DNA of 64,000 nucleotides from Ylistrum balloti (GCF_031769215.1 NW_026781907.1:1178001-1242000), one strand, 5' to 3'. Numbered from the stretch's first letter, positions 11,959-49,960 are shown. Translations and numbers: made by a program. The notes: generated by a model not told the origin, from the letters alone.

Positions 11959-14900
11959 TCATAAAATTTCATCAATCAAACCGAATTCTTTGGCTTCAAG
12001 TGGAGTCATGTAGTTATCCCTGTCCAATGCTTTCTCTGAAAAGAAAAAGTTATAATTTGACACTTAATGTTATCTACTTGAGACTTCCATCTAAATCTAC
12101 ATGATTAATATAATTGGTATACAGTGATTGGCAAAATAAAGTTTGGGTGGTCGGGTGGTGCAGTGGTAATGCACTCGCCTTTCACCTAGCCGACCGGGGT
12201 TCGATTCCCAGAACGGACATGTAAAGGTAAGGGGTCACCTGCCCCACCACATGGGTTTTCCCCGGGTACTCCGGTTTCCTCCCACAAGAAGACCCCTTGC
12301 GCGCTTACATCCAGGCTAACAAGAGTGAAAAGTATAGGTTGACATAACTTGTTTTACAATTGTTGTAAAATGAATAAAGTTTATATCAAAATAAAGTTTA
12401 CAAACAAATCATTTTAAGCATGATGATGCATATCTAAGTCAAAGATGTATATCAGCTTTTCAAAAGATGACAAAATAATGACTGTAGCCTCCGGAAAAGC
12501 TGAAGAATGACTAGGAGAGACCTATCTATAACCAGGGGTGTTAAGCCAGTGTGTTTAACATACACCTCCCCAATCGAATACTTACTAATAACCGAGGGTG
12601 TTAGGCCTGTGTGTTTAACATACAGCTCCCCAATACACTACTTACCTATAACCAGGGGTGTGAGGCCTGTGTGTTTAACATACAGCTCCCCAATAAACTA
12701 CTTACCTATAATTAGGGGTGTAAGGCCTGAGTGTTTAACATACAGCTCCCCAATAAACTACTTACCTATAACCAGGGTTGTGAGGCCTGTGTGTTTAACA
12801 TACACCTCCCCTATAAACTACTTACCTATAACCAGGGTTGTGAGGCCTGTGTGTTTAACATACAGCTCCCCAATCAAATACTTACTATAACCAGGGGTGT
12901 GAGGCCTGTGTGTTTAACATACAGCTCCCCAATACACTACTTACCTATAACCAGGGGTGTGAGGCCTGTGTGTTTAACATACAGCTCCCCAATCAAATAC
13001 TTACTATAACCAGGGGTGTAAGGCCTGTGTGTTTAACATACAGCTCCCCAATACACTACTTACTATAACCAGGGGTGTTAGGCCTGTGTGTTTAACATAC
13101 AGCTCCCCAATCAAATACTTACCTATAACCAGGGTTGTGAGGCCTGTGTGTTTAACATACACCTCCCCAATACACTACTTACCTATAACCAGGCGTGTGA
13201 GGCCTGTGTGTTTAACATACACCTCCCCAATAAACTACTTACTATAACCAGGGGTGTAAGGCCTGTGTGTTTAACATACAGCTCCCCAATCAAATACTTA
13301 CTATAACCAGGGGTGTTAGGCCTGTGTGTTTAACATACAGCTCCCCAATCAAATACTTACCTATAACCAGGGGTGTTAGGCCTGTGTGTTTAACATACAG
13401 CTCCCCAATCAAATACTTACCTATAACCAGGGGTGTTAGGCCTGTGTGTTTAACATACAGCTCCCCAATCAAATACTTACCTATAACCAGGGTTGTGAGG
13501 CCTGTGTGTTTAACATACAGCTCCCCAATAAACTACTTACCTATAACCAGGGGTGTTAGGCCTGTGTGTTTAACATACAGCTCCCCAATCAAATACTTAC
13601 CTATAACCAGGGGTGTTAGGCCTGTGTGTTTAACATACAGCTCCCCAATCAAATACTTACCTATAACCAGGGTTGTGAGGCCTGTGTGTTTAACATACAG
13701 CTCCCCAATACACTACTTACCTATAACCAAGGGTGTTAGGCCTGTGTGTTTAACATACAGCTCCCCAATCAAATACTTACCTATAACCAGGGGTGTTAGG
13801 CCTGTGTGTTTAACATACAGCTCCCCAATCAAATACTTACCTATAACCAGGGTTGTGAGGCCTGTGTGTTTAACATACAGCTCCCCAATACACTACTTAC
13901 CTATAACCAGGGGTGTTAGGCCTGTGTGTTTAACATACAGCTCCCCAATACACTACTTACCTATAACCAGGGGTGTTAGGCCTGTGTGTTTAACATACAG
14001 CTCCCCAATCAAATACTTACCTATAACCAGGGGTGTGAGGCCTGAGTGTTTAACATACAGCTCCCCAATAAACTACTCACTATAACCAGGGGTGTTAGGC
14101 CTGTGTGTTTAACATACACCTAAACTACTTACCTATAACCAGGGGTGTGAGGCCAAGCTCCCCAATAAACTACCTATAAAGGGGTGTTACACTACTTACC
14201 TATAACCAGGGGTGTGAGGCCTGTGTGTTTAACATACACCTCCCCAATCAAATACTTACTATAACCAGGGGTGTTAGGCCTGTGTGTTTAACATACAGCT
14301 CCCCAATCAAATACTTACTATAACCAGGGGTGTTAAGCCAGTGTGTTTAACATACAGCTCCCCAATACACTACTTACCTATAACCAGGGGTGTTAGGCCT
14401 GTGTGTTTAACATACACCTCCCCAATCAAATACTTACTATAACCAGGGGTGTTAGGCCTGTGTGTTTAACATACAGCTCCCCAATACACTACTTACCTAT
14501 AACCAGGGGTGTGAGGCCTGTGTGTTTAACATACAGCTCCCCAATACACTACTTACCTATAACCAGGGGTGTGAGGCCTGTGTGTTTAACATACAGCTCC
14601 CCAATACACTACTTACCTATAACCAGGGGTGTGAGGCCTGTGTGTTTAACATACAGCTCCCCAATACACTACTTACCTATAACCAGGGGTGTTAGGCCTG
14701 TGTGTTTAACATACAGCTCCTGAATCAGCTCCTTTGTTTTCTTCATATTGGCAGCTTTTATTTTAAGGTCTGTGACATAACCCTGAAAAGATGGATTCCT
14801 TTAGATCATTCCTATATCACAAAAGATAAATGTATTTCATCAGAGGGTAGGGTAGGTTTCCAATGCCTAACAAAAAAGTTCTTTAATTATAAACTAAATA

Positions 14901-18893: not shown

Positions 18894-21800
18894 ATGGCAG
18901 ACGAACTATTTACCAAAAAATTACCGGTAGTATTCAAGTGCCCGGACCGTGAGGATAGGTAAGCACACCAGGCCTCGAATTTAACATTTTGTGTCACTTG
19001 CTCAAATCAATTTAATTCTGTGAAATGTTAGGAATAGACGGCACTCACAGTTTGCATCTGATGAATCCACTTGCTGAAAAAAGCAAGTCATTATTTTTTC
19101 TACTCGTAATTCTTGGATTTGTACTTGCAAATAGCCAGTAAAAAGCCTTAAATTCAAGGCCTGCACATTTTACGGGTAGAATATTGGTGAATGTTGGAAG
19201 GTTGAGACTAGTATAGGCTATAGATCATTTGAACTGTCACCATTCATACAGACCTTATCAACATGCTCAGTATCATCTGTAGAAGCATCATCCAAGTGTG
19301 ATCACGAATATTTTCACAAGAAAGTGTACGTGTGTGTGTGTGTGCGAGTGTGTTTACACAGGAAGATCATCATTCTCTTTCTCATATGCTGTCAATGTCA
19401 AGACGATTGTTCACTGGTTTTATCATCCCATCAACAGCCAGATTAATTTTGAAGCAGGGTACCAGAGAGTAGCTGGTGGCTACCTTACTAAACAATGTAT
19501 AGGAGGTCTGTGCCCTTTGGTCTCTAGCCAGATACTCTGACACTTGACTAGAGAGAAATTCCCACTCACCAAAGCTAATAAGGACTAAGGTGACCTGAAC
19601 ATTCAATTTCTGTGCTACTCCGTCCATCACAAAATCTCCACCCCCAAAGACAAAAACAACAACACAGGTTCAGTATCTCCAAGGAAGCATCTCAATCTCC
19701 TATAGCTTCAACCCTTGAAGTGGTCAACATCACCAAATCTTTAATAGGAAGGAGTAATGGAAAGCACCTTGCCACTGCTGGGATTCGAACTAGCAACCTT
19801 TCAGTCTCTAGCCAGACACCCTACGGCTGGACTAAAGAGGAATTCCCACTAGCCAATGCTAAAGCATATCATAGTCTGTGTCTTGAAGGTCTTCTGCTGT
19901 AGTGGCTATAATTTGTAACTTATCACAGACAATATGGGATAGATACATCTAGATCTAGAATATTTCAAGTCCATGACAAGACACATTAATCAGTGCTCTA
20001 CTGATCATGACTGAGCTATGATGTGCTCATTGTGACCCTGATATCAGATGATGTCTCCCTTGGCGTTGGTCATAGAGATTGAAACAGTTACAGGAATAAG
20101 GCTTAATTATAACAAATCCTTGACCTTGTTTGAAGTGCCATAAGAATTAAGTTTTGGATCCTACAGTGGTCAACCAAATTGGAATCGAGAATGAAATTAT
20201 ATTGTTTTAACATTGTTCTATCAAAATTCCAAATTATAATGGCTAGGTGTGTCTCAATATGGTTTTCAAAGCAATAATTACTGACCCACGTCAACAACTA
20301 ATTTTTGAGAAAGGCTAGGGAGGGAAACTTGGGAGATCATATGTTTACCATCATAAGGAAATGCAGCCATACTTCATATTATGATAAAAAGAATATCAAG
20401 TGATCTTTGATGTCTTATACTATTTTTCAGGCGCATGTATGTGCAGTTGAGGATGGAACTGCAGACAGTATCTTCACCTTTACATAAAAAGGTTTGTACA
20501 AGAGTGTTTGGATTAAATATATCATTTATAACATTTATAGCAAGTCAACTCTCCAATGTGCCATGCATCAATGACAAGTTTTCAATAACAGTTGTCAAAA
20601 TTACTTGTATAGTGAATATAAATTTCTTTTCCTTATGTGATTTTTAATTCCACAAATTTGAAATAATCTCTAAAAAGGAAATTATCTTTTTATGAAAATA
20701 TGATGCAGCAGATTCCTATATTAACGAGGTGTTCGGTTGATTTGTTGACTTTTAAAGAATTTCATCAGCTTACCTGGAAACTGGAATGTGCCTTTACAAA
20801 CCAAACTCAGTCTAATTCTTTGGCACCTACGGTTTATAGTCCTTTTGCATGCATACACTTTATGTATAAATGAAAACCATGCTACAAATAATGTTCCCCT
20901 ATATAGCTAATGATTCCTTCTCCAGTTATCTCTGTTTAACAAGAAGATGCAAAATCATTAAATATTGAATGGTGGCTATGGAAAGTCTACCATGTTAACC
21001 ATGATCTCATGTATCAAACATGTAGATATTGGCAGAGAAAATCTATATCTTTGCTTTGTCAGTCTTGCAGGACTGTAAACAACAAGATAACAGACATTTT
21101 AGGGATCTTTATGGTTTTTTTAAAAAAAAGTTTTAATTTCAACTTTTCCCTTTTTTTGATGACAGGAGCTTGTGGTAAAAATGACAGATGACAAGGACTT
21201 GTTCTTTTTGTATACACTGCGTATTGGGGAAGAGGATTTCCAAAGGTAATCAGGCTTATTACACCAAACTAGTGTAATTGAAAAAAGTGTTGGGGATGCG
21301 TAAATTTCAATGCTTAGGTTAGGACTTTTTGATGAAATAAATGTTAGTGAGAATTGAATTATTCATCAAAGTTTGGAAATTACAGTTCAATGTATTATAG
21401 CCTCAACTTTAAGATAAGGTTTTTGATGAATTTTAGGGTGGTTTTTTTTTTCTTAAGATAAATTTTGCCACCAGAAAACTGTTGTTAAAATGGTAATAAC
21501 TTTAAATTTTCTTGTTTTTACAGCTTAAAAACACAACAAGGCCTTTTGGTGGATTTTGCGGCATTCCCTCAGAAATTTATTGACCTTTTAGATATGTGTT
21601 TACGAGAGGAACACAAAGAAATGCCAAAGTATGTAGTATGTAATGTGTGATATACATGTACATGTGTAAACAACGCAAAACATATTTCAGTAACTATAAT
21701 GGTCGTTACAAAAATTTACATCGAGGGAGAGGAGCCTGGAAGGCACATTTTTGTCACAATTACATCATGCTATTAATTAAACTTCACCACACATATCTTT

Positions 21801-24800
21801 AAGTGCCTTTAAGCCTTCAAACTGGATGTTTATCCTTGGATAAATACTTGATCTAGAGCATTTGGCAAAAGTTGGATAAAGTAACAAATTAACACTAGTT
21901 ATAGACACCAAGGGAGGGTAACATGTTAACATGTTAATGTTATTAAGTACGAGCATCCAAATCCTAAGAAATGTGTGTGATACTTGTAATTTGATCATTC
22001 CAGATTCGTGTTACACTTTGTGTCTCAAAGTTCTGTTAGTGGTGACAGAACTATGTCTGTGTTGAATGTGATAGAGACCAATCCGTTTAAGCATCTTACC
22101 CATCTTAGTCTCAAGTTTTTCCCGGGAACTGATTCTGACGTGAAGAAGTACTTAGCGGATTGCCTGAAGCAGCTGAGGGTATATAGATTTATAGCCTTTC
22201 TCATTTACTCTTCAAACGTTTGTTATTTTATCAAAGAATGTCTGTAAGTAAAAGGATATTGTGTAAAGCTACATAATCACTTTATGTCATGATATATCAG
22301 GATTGTAGAAGCAAGACAACAATATCTTGGAAAACTTTAAAAAGTTACACAAGTTTATTTCTTTGTAAAAACATACATGTTCCAGACAGATCAAGCACGA
22401 AGACTAAATCAATATCAATTCATACTGAAAACAATTATTTGATACTTCAATTTGAATAAATGTTAAGCATTTTTATAATCACACCTTGAAAAATCTGGGT
22501 CATTATGATGTAGCGATGCGCAGATCACAAGTTTTGGGTTATGTTTAAAAAGCCAGCGATGAGAAAGGGACATGACTACTAGTATTATGTCTGATTTTGC
22601 AATAACCAGGTACCTAGTTAAGACATGTCATCTCGAGATATATATTTCAGATATTTTGATAAAAAAAGGAACATTAGAAAAAAGTTATATGTTACAATTT
22701 TATTTAACAAAAATCACGATATCATTACAAACAATACCATCAAATTTTTTCTGATATTTTAAGGAAGACTTTGTTCCTGCTCTAGCAATACATAGCTTAA
22801 ATAAACATGTTTGAACCTTTGTCATATGAAAGACAAGGAATAGTTCTTGCTCATATTGAAGAAATATCACAAGGTATATGAAATAGTAAATAAGGCAGCA
22901 ATGTTTCTGGGAATCATGACATTTTGGTTTTTTTTTTCCACCAGGATACTAATGCATTGTTACAACAAAGATTAGAGCACACAGATGCTGACCTGAACCA
23001 CAAGTTACAGCAAACACAGGAGGTGAGTATTAGCTGTTCAGGGCAGTATCTGGTAAAACTGAACTGATATACACATGGTGGTGTTCTCAACCACAAGTTA
23101 CAACAAACACAGGAGGTGAGTATCAGCTGTTCAGGGCAGTATCTGGTAAAACTGAACTGACACACACATGGTGGTGTTCTCAACCACAAGTTACAACAAA
23201 CACAGGAGGTGAGTATCAGCTGTTCAGGGCAGTATCTGGTAAAACTGAACTGACACACACATGGTGGTGTTCTCAGCCACAATTTACACACACAGGAGGT
23301 GAGTATTAGCTGTTCAGGGCAGTATCTGGTAAAACTGAACTGATATACACATGGTGGTGTTCTCAACCACAAGTTACAACAAACACAGGAGGTGAGTATC
23401 AGCTGTTCAGGGCAGTATCTGGTAAAACTGAACTGACACACACATGGTGGTGTTCTCAGCCACAACTTACAACAAACACAGGAGGTGAGTATCAGCTGTT
23501 CAGGGCAGTATCTGGTAAAACTGAACTGACACACACATGGTGGTGTTCTCAGCCACAACTTACAACAAACACAGGAGGTGAGTATTAGCTGTTCAGGGCA
23601 GTATCTGGTAAAACTGAACTGACACACACATGGTGGTGTTCTCAGCCACAACTTACAACAAACACAGGAGGTGAGTATCAGCTGTTCAGGGCAGTATGAG
23701 GTAAAACCAATCCTATATTACCTTTAAACAGCACTGCATTTATTGTTTCTTTGTGGTCGCTGTATAATTCATGTACTGTATGTGTTATGTATGTAACAGG
23801 GTGTAGATAATGATGTAAGAAACAATTCTGAGTTCAGCTGTTGCTTTTAGGAAAAGAAACTTGTTCTCCTTATCTCCTTAAGTGGTAGTAGATTCTGTTC
23901 TGACTAACATGCATTATCAAGTGAAGTCACAGTATTCACTCAAAATTGCATGTCATTTTGGAAACTAAATCACCAAAAATAATTTATTATACCCCTGACT
24001 TAGTAAAGACGGGATACATATTATGTCTATAGTGTATTGAATTGTCTTTGTGCGTCCATAGGACAAAACGTTTGTACAAGATATCTCATGAGCCCCTCAA
24101 CAGCTTAAGTTGTATCACAATATCAAATTCTACACCTGATAAGATATTGTATTATTGGTGATCATCGGTCAAGTTTTTTAAGTTAAATATCACACTTGAC
24201 CATATTGAAACAAAATCTTTCAAACATTTCTTATGAAATTCTCAATAAATTTAGTTCATATTCATAGCATCCTACTATCACAACATTAACTTCTACTCTT
24301 GAAAAGGTTTTGTTGGTCATCGGTCAATGTTAGGGTCAAAGGTGACACTTGACCAGGTTTGGAAAAAAATTTAAAAAATTAGAACCTTTGTTTATTTAGT
24401 TTGTATTTTGGCAGAAATATACATAGATCTGTCTACAACACAATTATTGTATGGTGTTTCCTCTCACTGGTCTTGTTCTACAACAGACTCTCACATCCAA
24501 GTCAGTGGAGCTGGAGCATTTGAAGGCTGAGTGGACAGCCAAACTAACTGACCAGGCAGCGAGACACAAACATGAGATAGCAACAGAGAAAGAAAAGACT
24601 CTACAGGTATATCTACCTTAAACTTTTATAGGAAAAACATGTCTGTATCAATGATCATGTCTTAATACATTAAAGTGGTTCAGTTTGAATTCAGCTTGCC
24701 AAGAAATGTGTCAAACATGTCCTGGGGATTTAATCTGAATGTAGAAAATGTAGAGAAGATAGTTGCATAATTATATATTTTTTATCAAGTATTCAACAGT

Positions 24801-27800
24801 TTTAATTCTTCATGCGGATGTTGTCTGGTCCTCTACATTTGCTGTTTATACATCTTTGAACCAGACTCCTGTATTCCACTAGGAAGACTGCCGATATTAC
24901 TGAGTCTACCAGACAGGACGTTGGATCTGTTTTTCTTTGTATTATATATATTTTTTGTATTCTGGGCAGGAAGATACTAATACAATCTTTCTTAATGCTA
25001 TGTTTGGAAATTAAAAGAAATTGGAAACTTTTTCGGCTGTACTTTAATGTTATGTACACTTTGCAAAATCTTATAGATGTCTAGGAAAATCCCAAAATAG
25101 TCAACAGGGAAAAAAACCTTTTTCAGACAATTATGGGATTTTTGTATAACCAAAAAAGGTGAACAATTCCTTTTATACACTGCATATGCCAGTGCTAGTA
25201 CGCTCCACACTGGTTTGTCTGATGGAGGTGACCATGTAGGCATCAAAATGTCACACTCTAATCTTCTCCTGGTTGTGTTTTAAGAACTTCTATTCTTTTG
25301 AAATGATGAACCCGAAGAAAATGTTACGAAATACAAAATGCACTGTTTGTAAGCTTTCCTTGATAAGTGGAAAGCATTTCTGCTGATATGATATGCATAG
25401 TAAAGACATACCTGGCTTACTGTGGAAAAGATTTGTTTACAGACAAATTGAGACAATAACAATTGTCAATATAAAAAGACACACGATTTCCATAACATAA
25501 ATTATAGCTCTTACTAATGATCCAGGATCTTTTTACCTTAAAATGTTTTTTAGAAGGACATTTTTAGTCTGGAAACATAATTAAGGGAGTTAATTTAGAT
25601 TGATATATATGTAAGTTTTCATGTCCTTTTTCAGATGCAAAGCAGTTACCAACAGAAACAGGAAAGGGATCGTAAAGATATGGAACAAGCTCACATGAAA
25701 ATTGTTAAACAAATGGAATCAAAGTTATATGACCTGGAAGGTTCCAATAAGGTAATTAAAGTTATCGTTATTCATTGATGTTTACTGCATACATGGAAAC
25801 ATTTGCCCAGGTTTCCTCACAAACCTAAAATAATCATAACTTTTATACTAACTTTAATGTCAAACTTCAGCTCACTTTTTTCTGTTTGCCCTACTGCCTA
25901 AAGTAATTTTCTTCATGTGTTTACAGTAGGCAATTTTCACTGTAAGGGAAATCTGTATTCATTTTATTATTAAAAGTGCTAATCTCTTGATTTTGCAAAC
26001 AATAGTTTTTATCACTCTTGTGACTTATCAGCAAGGTAAGCATAGCTCATGCAAAGATATGGAATTGCATTAAAACATAAGATATTTTACTGGTGTGTGC
26101 TGGTGACTGAGACCTTGTCGAGATAATGGCATTAAAAAAAAACGTTTTGGTGTACACTTGATTCTGTGGATAAATATGTCTAAACAATCTACTTCCACTT
26201 ATTTGAAAAGTTCATGAACATATGAATTTGTTTAATTTCTTTATTGAGTGTACCCACAAAATCAATGAAAATTAATCCTCCACAAAAATTGGTGATATTG
26301 CAGTAAGTCAGTGACACTATTTGTTGTGGTACTTCAATGTCCTCCTGTCATTATTTTGGCATGAGTTGTTCATAAGGAGTATTAAACTTGGATTTTATGA
26401 GGGACTTTGTAATATGGTAAAAGTTGATCCTAACTACATGATTAAATTGTTTCTTTTTTATAGACTTGGATGACTTGGATTGTTTGCAATGTTTTAAGAG
26501 TATTTTGCATTTTCCTTCAGGACTTGTTAGACCGAAAGTATAAATCCGAGTCCAGTATTCGGGAAATGAAATCCAAGTTATCATTATTGGAGGAAGAACA
26601 TTTACGAGCTAAACAAGAGCTACAGAGTTTGAGGAAACAGAACACATCCCTTGATGGCGAGTACCATGAACAAGAGAAAGTCATTAATCAGCTCAGTACC
26701 CGTGTTGCGGTCCTGGAACAGGAAGTCAAAGATAAAGAGCAAGTTATAGCAAGATCGTCAGATTTGTTAGGGTCTGAACAGGACCAGAAGGTGAGTGTTT
26801 AGGTCTTGATTCACTGGTGCAATCTTTAATATGTTTAAATTATACCATATATTCTACTGCAGACAAAAATTACTCAGAATATTAACTTTGTTGGATACGA
26901 TTTTTGAGAAAGGTCTCTCACATGTGTTGCTCTCATACTTCACAAGTAAATTATGTTTGTAGGAAAAAGGTAGATATTTCTTCCTATAAGGAAAAGACAG
27001 TTTACTTGACGAAAGGATGTGTGAATAATTTACATTATGTAACCATGTGATAGTTAGATGATGTCATAAATTTGTGTTCATGACAATAACATCCAATTTA
27101 TTGTGATTGCAATGCCTAAGGAAAAAACATTAACCACAGTGTAATTTAAATATTGTTTTCAGTTTATTTTTTCATATATGTCATATTTTTCTGCATATTT
27201 TCTTCATTATTTTCAGAGAAAATTCGAAGATGAGGTGGACTTCAAAAGTAAAGATATTTACAAATTAGAAAACAAAGTGCGAGCTATGTCAGAAGAACTG
27301 ATGAAAGGCAATGAGATCATTAAGAAATTACAAGGAGAGATTAAAAATTATCATGCAAAGGTAAATCCTGCTTGATATATCTATGATTGACCTGGTGTTG
27401 ATCCTCAGTTCTTTTATATCGATGTGATTTGGCAGTTGTACAAATAAAGAACTGTCCTTTCAAGTGGAGAAACAAATTTTGAAAATTGATGTTGAATCTG
27501 ATGGTAGAAGCTTTGTATATGGTGATTACATATTTAAAAGACAGTTTTTTGTGAATTTTCTAGAGGTTTGAAGACCATAGATATTTATTTTAAGTGAAGG
27601 TCCGATAGAGGGTGACTTATAACCCCAGTACTTTAAATCAGAACTTAATCCACATTCTAAGGGTAAAATAAGAACTTAACGCAACATTCTAAGGGAATTG
27701 GGAAAATATGTACCTTATTGTTTTATCTGTGTCTTGAGAATTTTCTTGTTGTTCATTCAATAAGTTAAGAAATCTAGGGAAAGATTTTTTTTTTTAAAGA

Positions 27801-49194: not shown

Positions 49195-49850
49195 ATACTT
49201 GTGTGGTTGGAATAGTCGTAAGTGTTGTTGTGTCCTTGTCTGGTTGGAGTAGTTGTAAATGTTGTTGTGTCCTTGTCTCGTTGGAGTAGTGGTGAATGCT
49301 GTCGTTTCCTTGTCTGGTTGGAATGGTGGTGAGTGTTGTTGTGTACTTGTCTGGTTGGAGTAGTGGTGAGTGTTGTTGTGTGCATGTCTGGTTGGAGTAG
49401 TGGTGAGTGGTGTTGTGTGCTTGTTTGGTTGGAGTAGTTGTAATTGTTGTTGTGTCCTTGTGTGGTTGGAGTAGTGGTAAGTGTTGTTGTGTCCTTGTCT
49501 TGTTTGAGTAGTTGTAAATGTTGTTGTGTCCTTGTCTCGTTGGAGTAGTGGTGAATGTTGTCGTTTCCTTGTCTGGTTGGAGTAGTAGTGAGTGTTGTTG
49601 TGTCCTTGTCTGGTTGGAGTAGTGGTGAGTGTTGTTGTATCATTGTCTAGTTGGAGTAGTGGTGAGTGTTGTTGTGTCCTTGTCTAGTTGGAGTAGTGGT
49701 GAGTGTTGTTGTATCCTTGTCTGGTTGGAGTAGTTGTAAATGTTGTTGTGTCCTTGTGTGGTTGGAGTAGTGGTGAGTGTTGTTGTATCCTTGTCTGGTT
49801 GGAGTATGTGTAAATGTTGTTGTGTCCTTATCATGTTTGTGAAGTTGTAA
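49195..49850. repeat. 37-bp minisatellite, about 17 copies
   Basis: Unit agtgttgttgtgtccttgtctggttggagtagtggtg; spacing measured at 49591, 49628 and 49665. Confidence 0.95.
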
Positions 49851-49894
49851 ATGTTGAATACGGTCGGTATTGTAAATCATTATTAATTCAATTG

Positions 49895-49960
49895 CCTCCA
49901 CATGGATTCGAACCCAGGACCTTTGGCTTACTAGACTTACGCTCAACCGATCGAGCTGAG
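49895..49960 (-). mobile_element. tRNA-derived SINE head or tRNA pseudogene
   Basis: The minus strand reads agctcgatcggttgagc (A box) and ggttcgaatcc (B box). The anticodon stem does not pair and there is no clear acceptor stem. Confidence 0.5.

What the first reader, a model, noticed from the sequence alone, without database searches (positions are those of the whole stretch)
22945..23706. SAS-6 exon-end array has evolved complete mini-introns and potential micro-exons
Seen: seven extra copies of exon 6's last 27 nt plus GTGAGT follow the exon. Four units carry ttctcAG (AG at 23275-76, 23458-59, 23551-52, 23644-45) instead of ttctcAA, with a CTGAC branch-like motif 24 nt upstream. Each of these has a 68-nt GT..AG mini-intron followed by a 22- or 25-nt micro-exon with a strong donor. 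Including any three restores the frame; three 25-nt units read [25 protein letters not shown] with no stop. One, two or four units cause a frameshift, and read-through of the real donor hits TGA at 23065-67. Inference: exon birth by tandem duplication of a splice junction, able to generate either a 24-25-aa insertion at the start of the SAS-6 coiled coil or NMD isoforms. SAS-6 dosage is known to control centriole number.
Basis: partly seen in the sequence, partly recalled or inferred. Interest (0 to 1): 0.8.

Follow-up and report, generated by a model that had tools for sequence, protein, structure and literature searches.

The report
Splice-junction minisatellite in scallop SAS-6 intron
Intron 6 of a scallop's centriole gene SAS-6 starts with seven extra tandem copies of the preceding exon's end plus its splice donor; this is a known, usually harmless type of repeat ("mirage"), and nothing available shows the copies are spliced in as extra mini-exons.

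Summary
The sequence observation is correct in every detail I could check. A 93-nt unit (last 25-27 nt of SAS-6 exon 6, the donor GTGAGT and about 62 more intron bases) is repeated 7.7 times at 22996-23707. All eight donors are identical. Four unit junctions read AG instead of AA, and the frame arithmetic holds.

The origin claim is supported: this is a local tandem duplication of an exon-intron junction. The functional claim (mini-introns, micro-exons, a 24-25-aa insert or an NMD switch) is untested, and the indirect evidence points against it.
- The array is unique to this locus.
- It is absent from the orthologous intron of Mizuhopecten, Argopecten and three other bivalves.
- It is very young; units 3 and 5 are identical.
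- The AG is one substitution spread by repeat turnover.
- The candidate exons are 22 and 25 nt, so not frame-preserving, and including all four shifts the frame.
- The candidate acceptor is T-poorer than all 13 real acceptors of the gene.
- Sixteen mollusc SAS-6 proteins are gap-free across this junction.

No RNA run was available, so usage could not be tested.

This class is already described: amphioxus "mirages" and the human F7, IFI6, CBS, LMNB2 and PDGF minisatellites. The scan has already reported the same kind elsewhere in this genome. Verdict: a new member of a known kind, of low to moderate interest.

The parts
22945..23022 (+). SAS-6 exon 6 (26 codons, phase 0), start of the coiled coil
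   Evidence: Translation. The exon is 96% identical to exon 6 of Mizuhopecten and Argopecten.
23023..23030 (+). Authentic 5' splice site GTGAGTAT, the first of eight identical donors
   Evidence: Only this donor gives an open frame into exon 7 without an intervening stop.
22996..23707 (+). 93-nt minisatellite, 7.7 copies; its first unit spans the exon 6 / intron 6 boundary
   Evidence: Tandem Repeats Finder; unit table. The unit is unique to this locus in the assembly. It is supported by DNA contigs of run X1.
23065..23067 (+). In-frame TGA reached if the first donor is skipped; it recurs in each unit
   Evidence: use of donors 2 to 8 all read into this stop.
23116..23676 (+). Span holding the seven pseudo-donors (GT at 23116, 23209, 23299, 23392, 23485, 23578, 23671), each identical to the real donor over at least 14 nt
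23275..23276 (+). First AG variant at a unit junction (ancestral AA); the same variant lies at 23458-59, 23551-52 and 23644-45
   Evidence: Column 93 of the unit table. The tract before the AG is identical in all four units, with 10 of 18 pyrimidines and 6 of 18 T.
23277..23298 (+). Candidate micro-exon 1 (22 nt; the unit with the 3-nt deletion)
   Evidence: There is no expression evidence.
23460..23484 (+). Candidate micro-exon 2 (25 nt)
   Evidence: There is no expression evidence.
23553..23577 (+). Candidate micro-exon 3 (25 nt)
   Evidence: There is no expression evidence.
23646..23670 (+). Candidate micro-exon 4 (25 nt), in the last, partial and most diverged unit
23708..24486 (+). Non-repeated remainder of intron 6, ending in the real acceptor (AG at 24485-86)
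24487..24606 (+). SAS-6 exon 7 (40 codons)

Best explanation
This is a young, lineage-specific 'mirage' or 'donor-echo' minisatellite. A 93-nt segment spanning the exon 6 / intron 6 junction of the single-copy SAS-6 gene was duplicated in tandem. It was then amplified by slippage or unequal exchange, partly as a 3-unit block, so the real donor is followed by seven perfect pseudo-donors.

I infer that the spliceosome uses the first donor, the one that closes the 78-nt exon 6, and removes the whole array as part of a 1464-nt intron. That is what happens in the experimentally studied cases of this architecture.

The A>G change that creates AG at four unit junctions is a neutral repeat variant spread by array turnover. 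At most it adds a low level of cryptic, mostly frame-shifting splice products that nonsense-mediated decay (NMD) would clear.

Shown: the anatomy, the local origin, the absence from relatives, the youth of the array, and the single-copy status of the gene. Inferred: which splice sites are used.
For: Anatomy.

Local origin:
- The unit is found only at this locus in the 648.5-Mb assembly.
- The exonic part of the unit matches the orthologous exon end in Mizuhopecten and Argopecten.

Lineage-specific:
- The orthologous intron 6 has no array in Mizuhopecten (321 nt), Argopecten (720 nt), L009 (87 nt), L005/L006 (390 nt) or L008 (2.5 kb).
- L007 and L010 have no intron 6 at all.

Young and homogenised:
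- Units 2, 3, 5, 6 and 7 differ by 0-3 of 93 nt, and units 3 and 5 are identical.
- There is a 276-nt higher-order period.
- All repeats share a derived A at unit column 13, whereas the exon copy keeps the ancestral G.

The first donor must work:
- SAS-6 is single-copy here.
- Every other donor choice reads into TGA.
- Sixteen mollusc SAS-6 proteins, several derived from transcripts, are gap-free across the junction.

Background:
- 16 minisatellites cover 16.8% of this window, and a second junction-spanning array sits in the neighbouring CLPP gene.

Precedent:
- Amphioxus mirages do not disturb regular splicing in RT-PCR (PMC3087553).
- Only the most upstream site is used in human F7, LMNB2 and PDGF (PMC1557585).
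Against: - There is no RNA evidence for this species, so exclusive use of the first donor is inferred, not shown.
- In two human precedents (IFI6 and CBS) the two nearest pseudo-donors are also used.
- The pseudo-donors here are perfect copies of a strong donor.
- The four AG units do have a YTNAY motif at -24 and a short pyrimidine run. Their tract is no worse in pyrimidine count than the gene's two weakest real acceptors, e11 and e12.
- A close relative has an 87-nt intron at this very position, so short introns are not excluded in this clade.
Confidence: 0.68

Rival explanations
1. Leaky splice-site competition. A noticeable share of SAS-6 pre-mRNA uses a downstream pseudo-donor or an AG unit. 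This gives transcripts with a premature stop that are degraded by NMD. The array would then lower productive SAS-6 output as a by-product, without being selected for that.
For: - There are eight identical strong donors.
- All alternative donor choices, and inclusion of 1, 2 or 4 units, give a stop either in the first repeat unit after exon 6 or within exon 7.
- The candidate acceptors fall within the range of the gene's weakest real ones.
Against: - In F7, LMNB2, PDGF and the amphioxus Adh3 and globin mirages only the authentic site is used.
- SAS-6 is single-copy and essential for centriole assembly (established knowledge), so strong leakage should be selected against.
- No RNA data exist either way.
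Confidence: 0.22
2. The AG units are real mini-introns and micro-exons whose regulated inclusion yields either an in-frame 24-25-residue insert early in the coiled coil, just after the head domain, or an NMD switch that tunes SAS-6 dosage.
For: - Complete GT..AG intervals of 68 nt exist, with a CTGAC motif at -24.
- Any three units restore the frame with no stop.
- An 87-nt intron exists at this position in a relative.
- The literature has proposed exon birth from mirage repeats as a model.
Against: - Exon lengths of 22 and 25 nt are not frame-preserving. Exactly three of four must be included, and including all four shifts the frame.
- The AG is one mutation copied by turnover, not repeated evolution.
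- The array is absent from five related bivalve genomes.
- No mollusc SAS-6 protein has an insert here.
- The insert contains Pro and Gly and its length is not a multiple of seven, so it would break the coiled-coil register next to the head domain (inference from the sequence).
- The acceptor has the lowest T count of the gene's acceptors.
- The real exon 6 would have to splice across 254-437 nt holding perfect pseudo-donors.
Confidence: 0.04
3. Assembly artefact: the array, or its copy number and variants, is a mis-assembly of reads.
For: Repeats of this size are error-prone in assemblies. The amphioxus paper notes a mis-assembled mirage in a draft genome. The contigs of run X1 break up inside the array.
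Against: - X1 contigs reach both edges of the array (records ending at 23040 and starting at 23668).
- An exact 90-nt unit-junction contig sits at about twice the flanking depth.
- The internal structure is orderly, with a 3-unit higher-order repeat and diagnostic variants.
Confidence: 0.04

Closest known systems
Amphioxus 'mirages': minisatellite-like tandem duplications of exon-intron boundaries in Adh3 and the globin genes BflGb6 and BflGb9 (PMC3087553)
   Same: In both, tandem units span an exon-intron boundary and derive from the gene's own sequence, and many units keep AG/GT signals. Both show concerted evolution inside the cluster, with the boundary units less homogenised. Both occur in a marine invertebrate genome rich in such arrays. 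The paper already proposes that an exonic part of a unit could become a real exon.
   Different: Here the host gene is SAS-6 in a scallop, and a derived A>G gives four units a complete GT..AG interval.
Human F7 intron 7 37-bp VNTR and its relatives (IFI6/6-16, CBS IVS13, LMNB2, PDGF) (PMC1557585)
   Same: In both, the first monomer spans the exon-intron boundary, so the authentic donor is followed by identical pseudo-donors. The monomers are of similar size: 100 bp in LMNB2, 81 bp in PDGF and 93 nt here.
   Different: In the human genes the choice of site was measured: the upstream site only in F7, LMNB2 and PDGF, and up to two extra sites in IFI6 and CBS. Here it was not. The F7 monomer holds only 4 exon bases, against 25-27 here. 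The passages I read did not discuss AG acceptors inside the units.
Intron gain by tandem duplication across AGGT proto-splice sites (Rogers model; PMC3265369, PMC4974935, PMC2891723)
   Same: In both, a tandem duplication copies splice signals and so offers new GT..AG pairs without step-by-step evolution of each element.
   Different: In those cases an exonic segment is duplicated and part of it becomes a new intron, and the outcome is documented by transcripts. Here an existing junction is duplicated inside an existing intron, and no new splicing is documented.

Membership tests
Mirage / donor-echo minisatellite (exon-intron boundary tandem repeat) | Head-to-tail tandem array of a minisatellite-size unit | tested here: met
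   Period 93, 7.7 copies, 95% matches, score 1277.
Mirage / donor-echo minisatellite (exon-intron boundary tandem repeat) | The first unit spans the exon-intron boundary, so the authentic splice site is reiterated in the intron | tested here: met
   Unit 1 is 22998-23090 and holds the last 25 nt of exon 6 plus its donor. Seven further identical donors follow.
Mirage / donor-echo minisatellite (exon-intron boundary tandem repeat) | The unit derives from the gene's own sequence, not from a dispersed repeat | tested here: met
   The unit matches only this locus in the 648.5-Mb assembly. Its exonic part is orthologous to the exon 6 end of Mizuhopecten and Argopecten.
Mirage / donor-echo minisatellite (exon-intron boundary tandem repeat) | Regular splicing is kept (the authentic site is used) | not testable with these tools
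   No RNA run was found, and the only run laid was DNA contigs. The support is indirect: the gene is single-copy, all other donors meet a stop, and orthologues are collinear.
Mirage / donor-echo minisatellite (exon-intron boundary tandem repeat) | Copy number is unstable between haplotypes (VNTR behaviour) | tested here: inconclusive
   X1 shows a unit variant (23559 C>T) and uneven depth across the array, but contigs cannot give copy number.
SAS-6 (SASS6) centriole cartwheel protein | N-terminal SAS-6_N head domain followed by a long coiled coil, collinear with orthologues | tested here: met
   PF16531 hits exons 4 and 5. Fifteen exon matches are 81-83% identical to scallop SAS-6. The exon order is collinear with turtle, amphioxus and mollusc proteins.
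Conserved alternative micro-exon | Frame-preserving length (a multiple of three) | tested here: not met
   The units are 22, 25, 25 and 25 nt. Only exactly three together keep the frame.
Conserved alternative micro-exon | Present at the orthologous position in related species | tested here: not met
   No array and no extra exon in intron 6 of five related bivalve genomes. No insert in 16 mollusc proteins.
Conserved alternative micro-exon | Inclusion seen in transcripts | not testable with these tools
   No RNA run holds this stretch. No same-species transcript-derived protein was returned.

The most novel reading that the evidence does not exclude
The AG-bearing units are really spliced in this scallop. 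A measurable, perhaps tissue- or stage-dependent, fraction of SAS-6 pre-mRNA includes 22/25-nt units or uses pseudo-donors. The array would then act as an unproductive-splicing (NMD) sink on a dosage-sensitive centriole gene. That would be a caught-in-the-act case of exon birth from a splice-junction minisatellite.
Probability: 0.1. Interest if true: 0.55.

Novelty: new member of a known kind. Interest (0 to 1): 0.25.

Why it matters
As it stands, this is one more example of a described repeat class. It sits in a genome where the class seems common, so on its own it changes little.

Its value is as a natural test case. It offers eight identical strong donors and four identical new acceptors in front of one real acceptor, in an essential single-copy gene whose dosage controls centriole number. 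Transcript data from this scallop would show directly whether a mollusc spliceosome follows the 'most upstream donor wins' rule established for human F7. It would also show whether a single A>G inside a mirage repeat is enough to create exons, the model proposed for amphioxus globins but never observed.

Tried and rejected
RNA evidence:
- The look-up of sequencing runs (kind rna, 21500-27400) returned no RNA run. It returned one run of unknown kind. When laid on the window, this proved to be DNA contigs with even intron coverage. It therefore gave no junctions, starts or expression.

Array in other assemblies:
- I searched the 5.8-billion-protein collection with the 245-aa minus-strand ORF that runs through the repeat (22917-23651).
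- Nothing scored at E <= 0.001. That ORF is therefore a by-product of the repeat, and no haplotype comparison was possible.

Protein searches:
- The first full-length representative (P0007) turned out to be a turtle protein, and the search with it listed only vertebrates. It confirmed the gene's identity but wasted a search.
- A mixed alignment of a transcript protein with single-exon rows (A1) stacked the coiled-coil exons on top of each other, so I did not use it as a query.

Full report
**What is there.**
- Tandem Repeats Finder gives a single array at 22996-23707: period 93, 7.7 copies, 95% matches, score 1277, with a higher-order period of 276 nt.
- Units begin at 22998, 23091, 23184, 23277, 23367, 23460, 23553 and 23646. 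The fourth unit has a 3-nt deletion and the eighth is partial and diverges after 52 nt.
- Unit 1 is the real end of a coding exon: 22945-23022 translates without a stop in phase 0, and the next exon starts at 24487.
- All eight donors are identical over CAGGAG|GTGAGTAT.
- At unit column 93 the ancestral A, which comes from the exon, is G in units 3, 5, 6 and 7. This gives AG at 23275-76, 23458-59, 23551-52 and 23644-45.
- The frame arithmetic holds. The candidate exons are 22, 25, 25 and 25 nt. Any three restore the frame with no stop. One, two or four units shift the frame and meet a stop inside exon 7. Skipping the first donor meets TGA at 23065-67.

**The gene.**
- Pfam SAS-6_N matches the exons at 21546-21650 and 22008-22130.
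- A representative search with the 90-codon exon at 26521-26790 returned SAS-6 homologues.
- Named hits of two word searches are all 'spindle assembly abnormal protein 6 homolog'.
- The closest proteins are those of the scallops Mizuhopecten yessoensis and Argopecten irradians, at 81% and 83% identity over 14-15 exon matches. The window therefore comes from a scallop.
- The gene is single-copy in the 648.5-Mb assembly.

**Origin.**
- The 93-nt unit matches nothing else in the assembly, so it is not a dispersed repeat.
- Its exonic part is orthologous to the exon 6 end of the two scallop relatives.
- The array is missing from the orthologous intron in every relative I could fetch:
  - Mizuhopecten (intron 6 of 321 nt)
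  - Argopecten (720 nt)
  - an unnamed bivalve contig L009 (87 nt)
  - L005/L006 (390 nt)
  - L008 (2.5 kb)
- Two further relatives (L007, L010) have exons 6 and 7 fused with no intron.
- So the array arose in the window's lineage, after its split from those scallops, by local tandem duplication of the exon-intron junction.

**Age and dynamics.**
- Units 2, 3, 5, 6 and 7 differ from one another by 0-3 positions, and units 3 and 5 are identical.
- Units 1 and 4 share three diagnostic variants, which fits duplication of a 3-unit block.
- All repeats carry a derived A at unit column 13, whereas the exon copy keeps the G also seen in Argopecten. This is the usual pattern of homogenisation inside a cluster with the edge unit left out.
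- The AG variant is linked to a second change at unit column 7. The four AGs are therefore one substitution spread by array turnover, not four events, and they give no sign of selection.

**Would the sites work?**
- The donors are as strong as the real one by construction.
- The candidate acceptor tract (-20 to -3) has 10 of 18 pyrimidines and 6 T.
- The 13 real SAS-6 acceptors I could place have 9-15 pyrimidines and 7-12 T. The candidate is therefore the T-poorest, and only e11 has fewer pyrimidines.
- It has a YTNAY motif with its A at -24.
- No SAS-6 intron in this species is shorter than about 270 nt, although L009 shows an 87-nt intron at this very position.
- The 68-nt intervals join a pseudo-donor to the next AG. 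To keep the frame, the real exon 6 would have to splice across 254 or 437 nt that contain perfect pseudo-donors, and then exactly three of the four units would have to be included.
- If all four were recognised equally well, the default product would be frame-shifted.
- Sixteen mollusc SAS-6 proteins, several from transcript assemblies, are gap-free across this junction.
- The hypothetical insert contains Pro and Gly, and its length is not a multiple of seven. I infer it would interrupt the coiled coil just after the head domain.
- I did not fold or search any joined model, because joined sequences have no reference.

**Expression.**
- The only holder is a set of DNA contigs that differ by about 1% in the flanks, so it is apparently another individual, though the alternative haplotype of the assembled animal is not excluded.
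- These contigs confirm both edges of the array and a unit junction at about double depth, and they show one unit variant. They say nothing about splicing.
- Which sites are used is therefore inference.

**Comparison with what is known.**
- Minisatellites whose first monomer spans an exon-intron boundary are described in human F7, IFI6 (6-16), CBS, LMNB2 and PDGF.
  - In F7, LMNB2 and PDGF only the most upstream donor is used.
  - In IFI6 and CBS the two nearest pseudo-sites are used as well (PMC1557585).
- In amphioxus the same structures are called 'mirages'.
  - RT-PCR shows normal splicing.
  - The authors already sketch how an exonic part of a unit could become a real exon (PMC3087553).
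- Intron gain by tandem duplication across AGGT is a related, documented process.
- Earlier notes of this scan report the same kind of array in several other genes of this genome and cite the same two precedents. I checked both papers myself.
- In this window, 16 minisatellites cover 16.8% of the sequence. A second junction-spanning array (60 nt x 36.7) fills an intron of the neighbouring, divergently transcribed CLPP gene.

**Verdict.**
- The origin by duplication of a splice junction is supported.
- The claim that mini-introns and micro-exons have 'evolved' and act on SAS-6 is untested and, on indirect evidence, unlikely.
- Most likely (about 0.68) this is a tolerated mirage repeat removed with the intron from the first donor.
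- Leaky cryptic splicing feeding NMD is the main rival (about 0.22).
- It is a new member of a known kind, already seen by the scan elsewhere in this genome. Interest is 0.25.

Noticed in passing
window 12526-14720 (minus-strand gene): A 60-nt x 36.7 array fills the intron that follows a CLPP exon. Each unit repeats about 44 nt of the exon end plus GTAAGT and about 10 intron bases. This is the same architecture as the SAS-6 array, and the two genes are transcribed divergently with 5' ends roughly 1-2 kb apart.
   Followed up: partly
whole window: Sixteen separate minisatellite arrays (periods 20-114 nt) cover 10,764 nt, or 16.8% of the 64-kb window. With this density, arrays that happen to start in an exon end are not surprising.
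   Followed up: partly
window 24714-25383 (SAS-6 intron 7): DNA contigs of run X1 pile up to word depths of 100-41,000, against about 12 in the flanks, with many loose ends. This indicates a very high-copy dispersed repeat inside intron 7.
   Followed up: no
L007:8729-8923, L010:520-711, L008:5589-5843: Intron positions vary among bivalve SAS-6 genes. Exons 6 and 7 are fused in two relatives, and exons 5 and 6 are fused in a third. Intron 6 ranges from 87 nt to 2.5 kb in the others.
   Followed up: partly
L013:9983-10497 (Argopecten irradians SAS-6 intron 7): A 70-nt x 7.4 array at 99% identity starts about 100 nt after exon 7. It is another young minisatellite in the same gene of a related scallop, but it does not span the exon boundary.
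   Followed up: no
window 22914-23651, minus strand: A 245-aa open frame runs through the array on the opposite strand. It exists only because the unit has no stop in that frame, and it has no relatives in the protein collection.
   Followed up: yes
window 49198-49829 and 49870-49960: A 37-nt x 17 array has a consensus that contains GTGAGT, and its minus strand reads as Thr-rich open frames. It is followed by a stretch that looks like a tRNA-derived SINE. No exon end was evident at either edge of the array.
   Followed up: partly
window 23023-23030 versus L012:7982-7990 and L013:9041-9049: The exon 6 donor is GTGAGT in this species but GTTGGT in Mizuhopecten and GTCAGT in Argopecten. The amplified donor is therefore closer to the consensus than its orthologues.
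   Followed up: no
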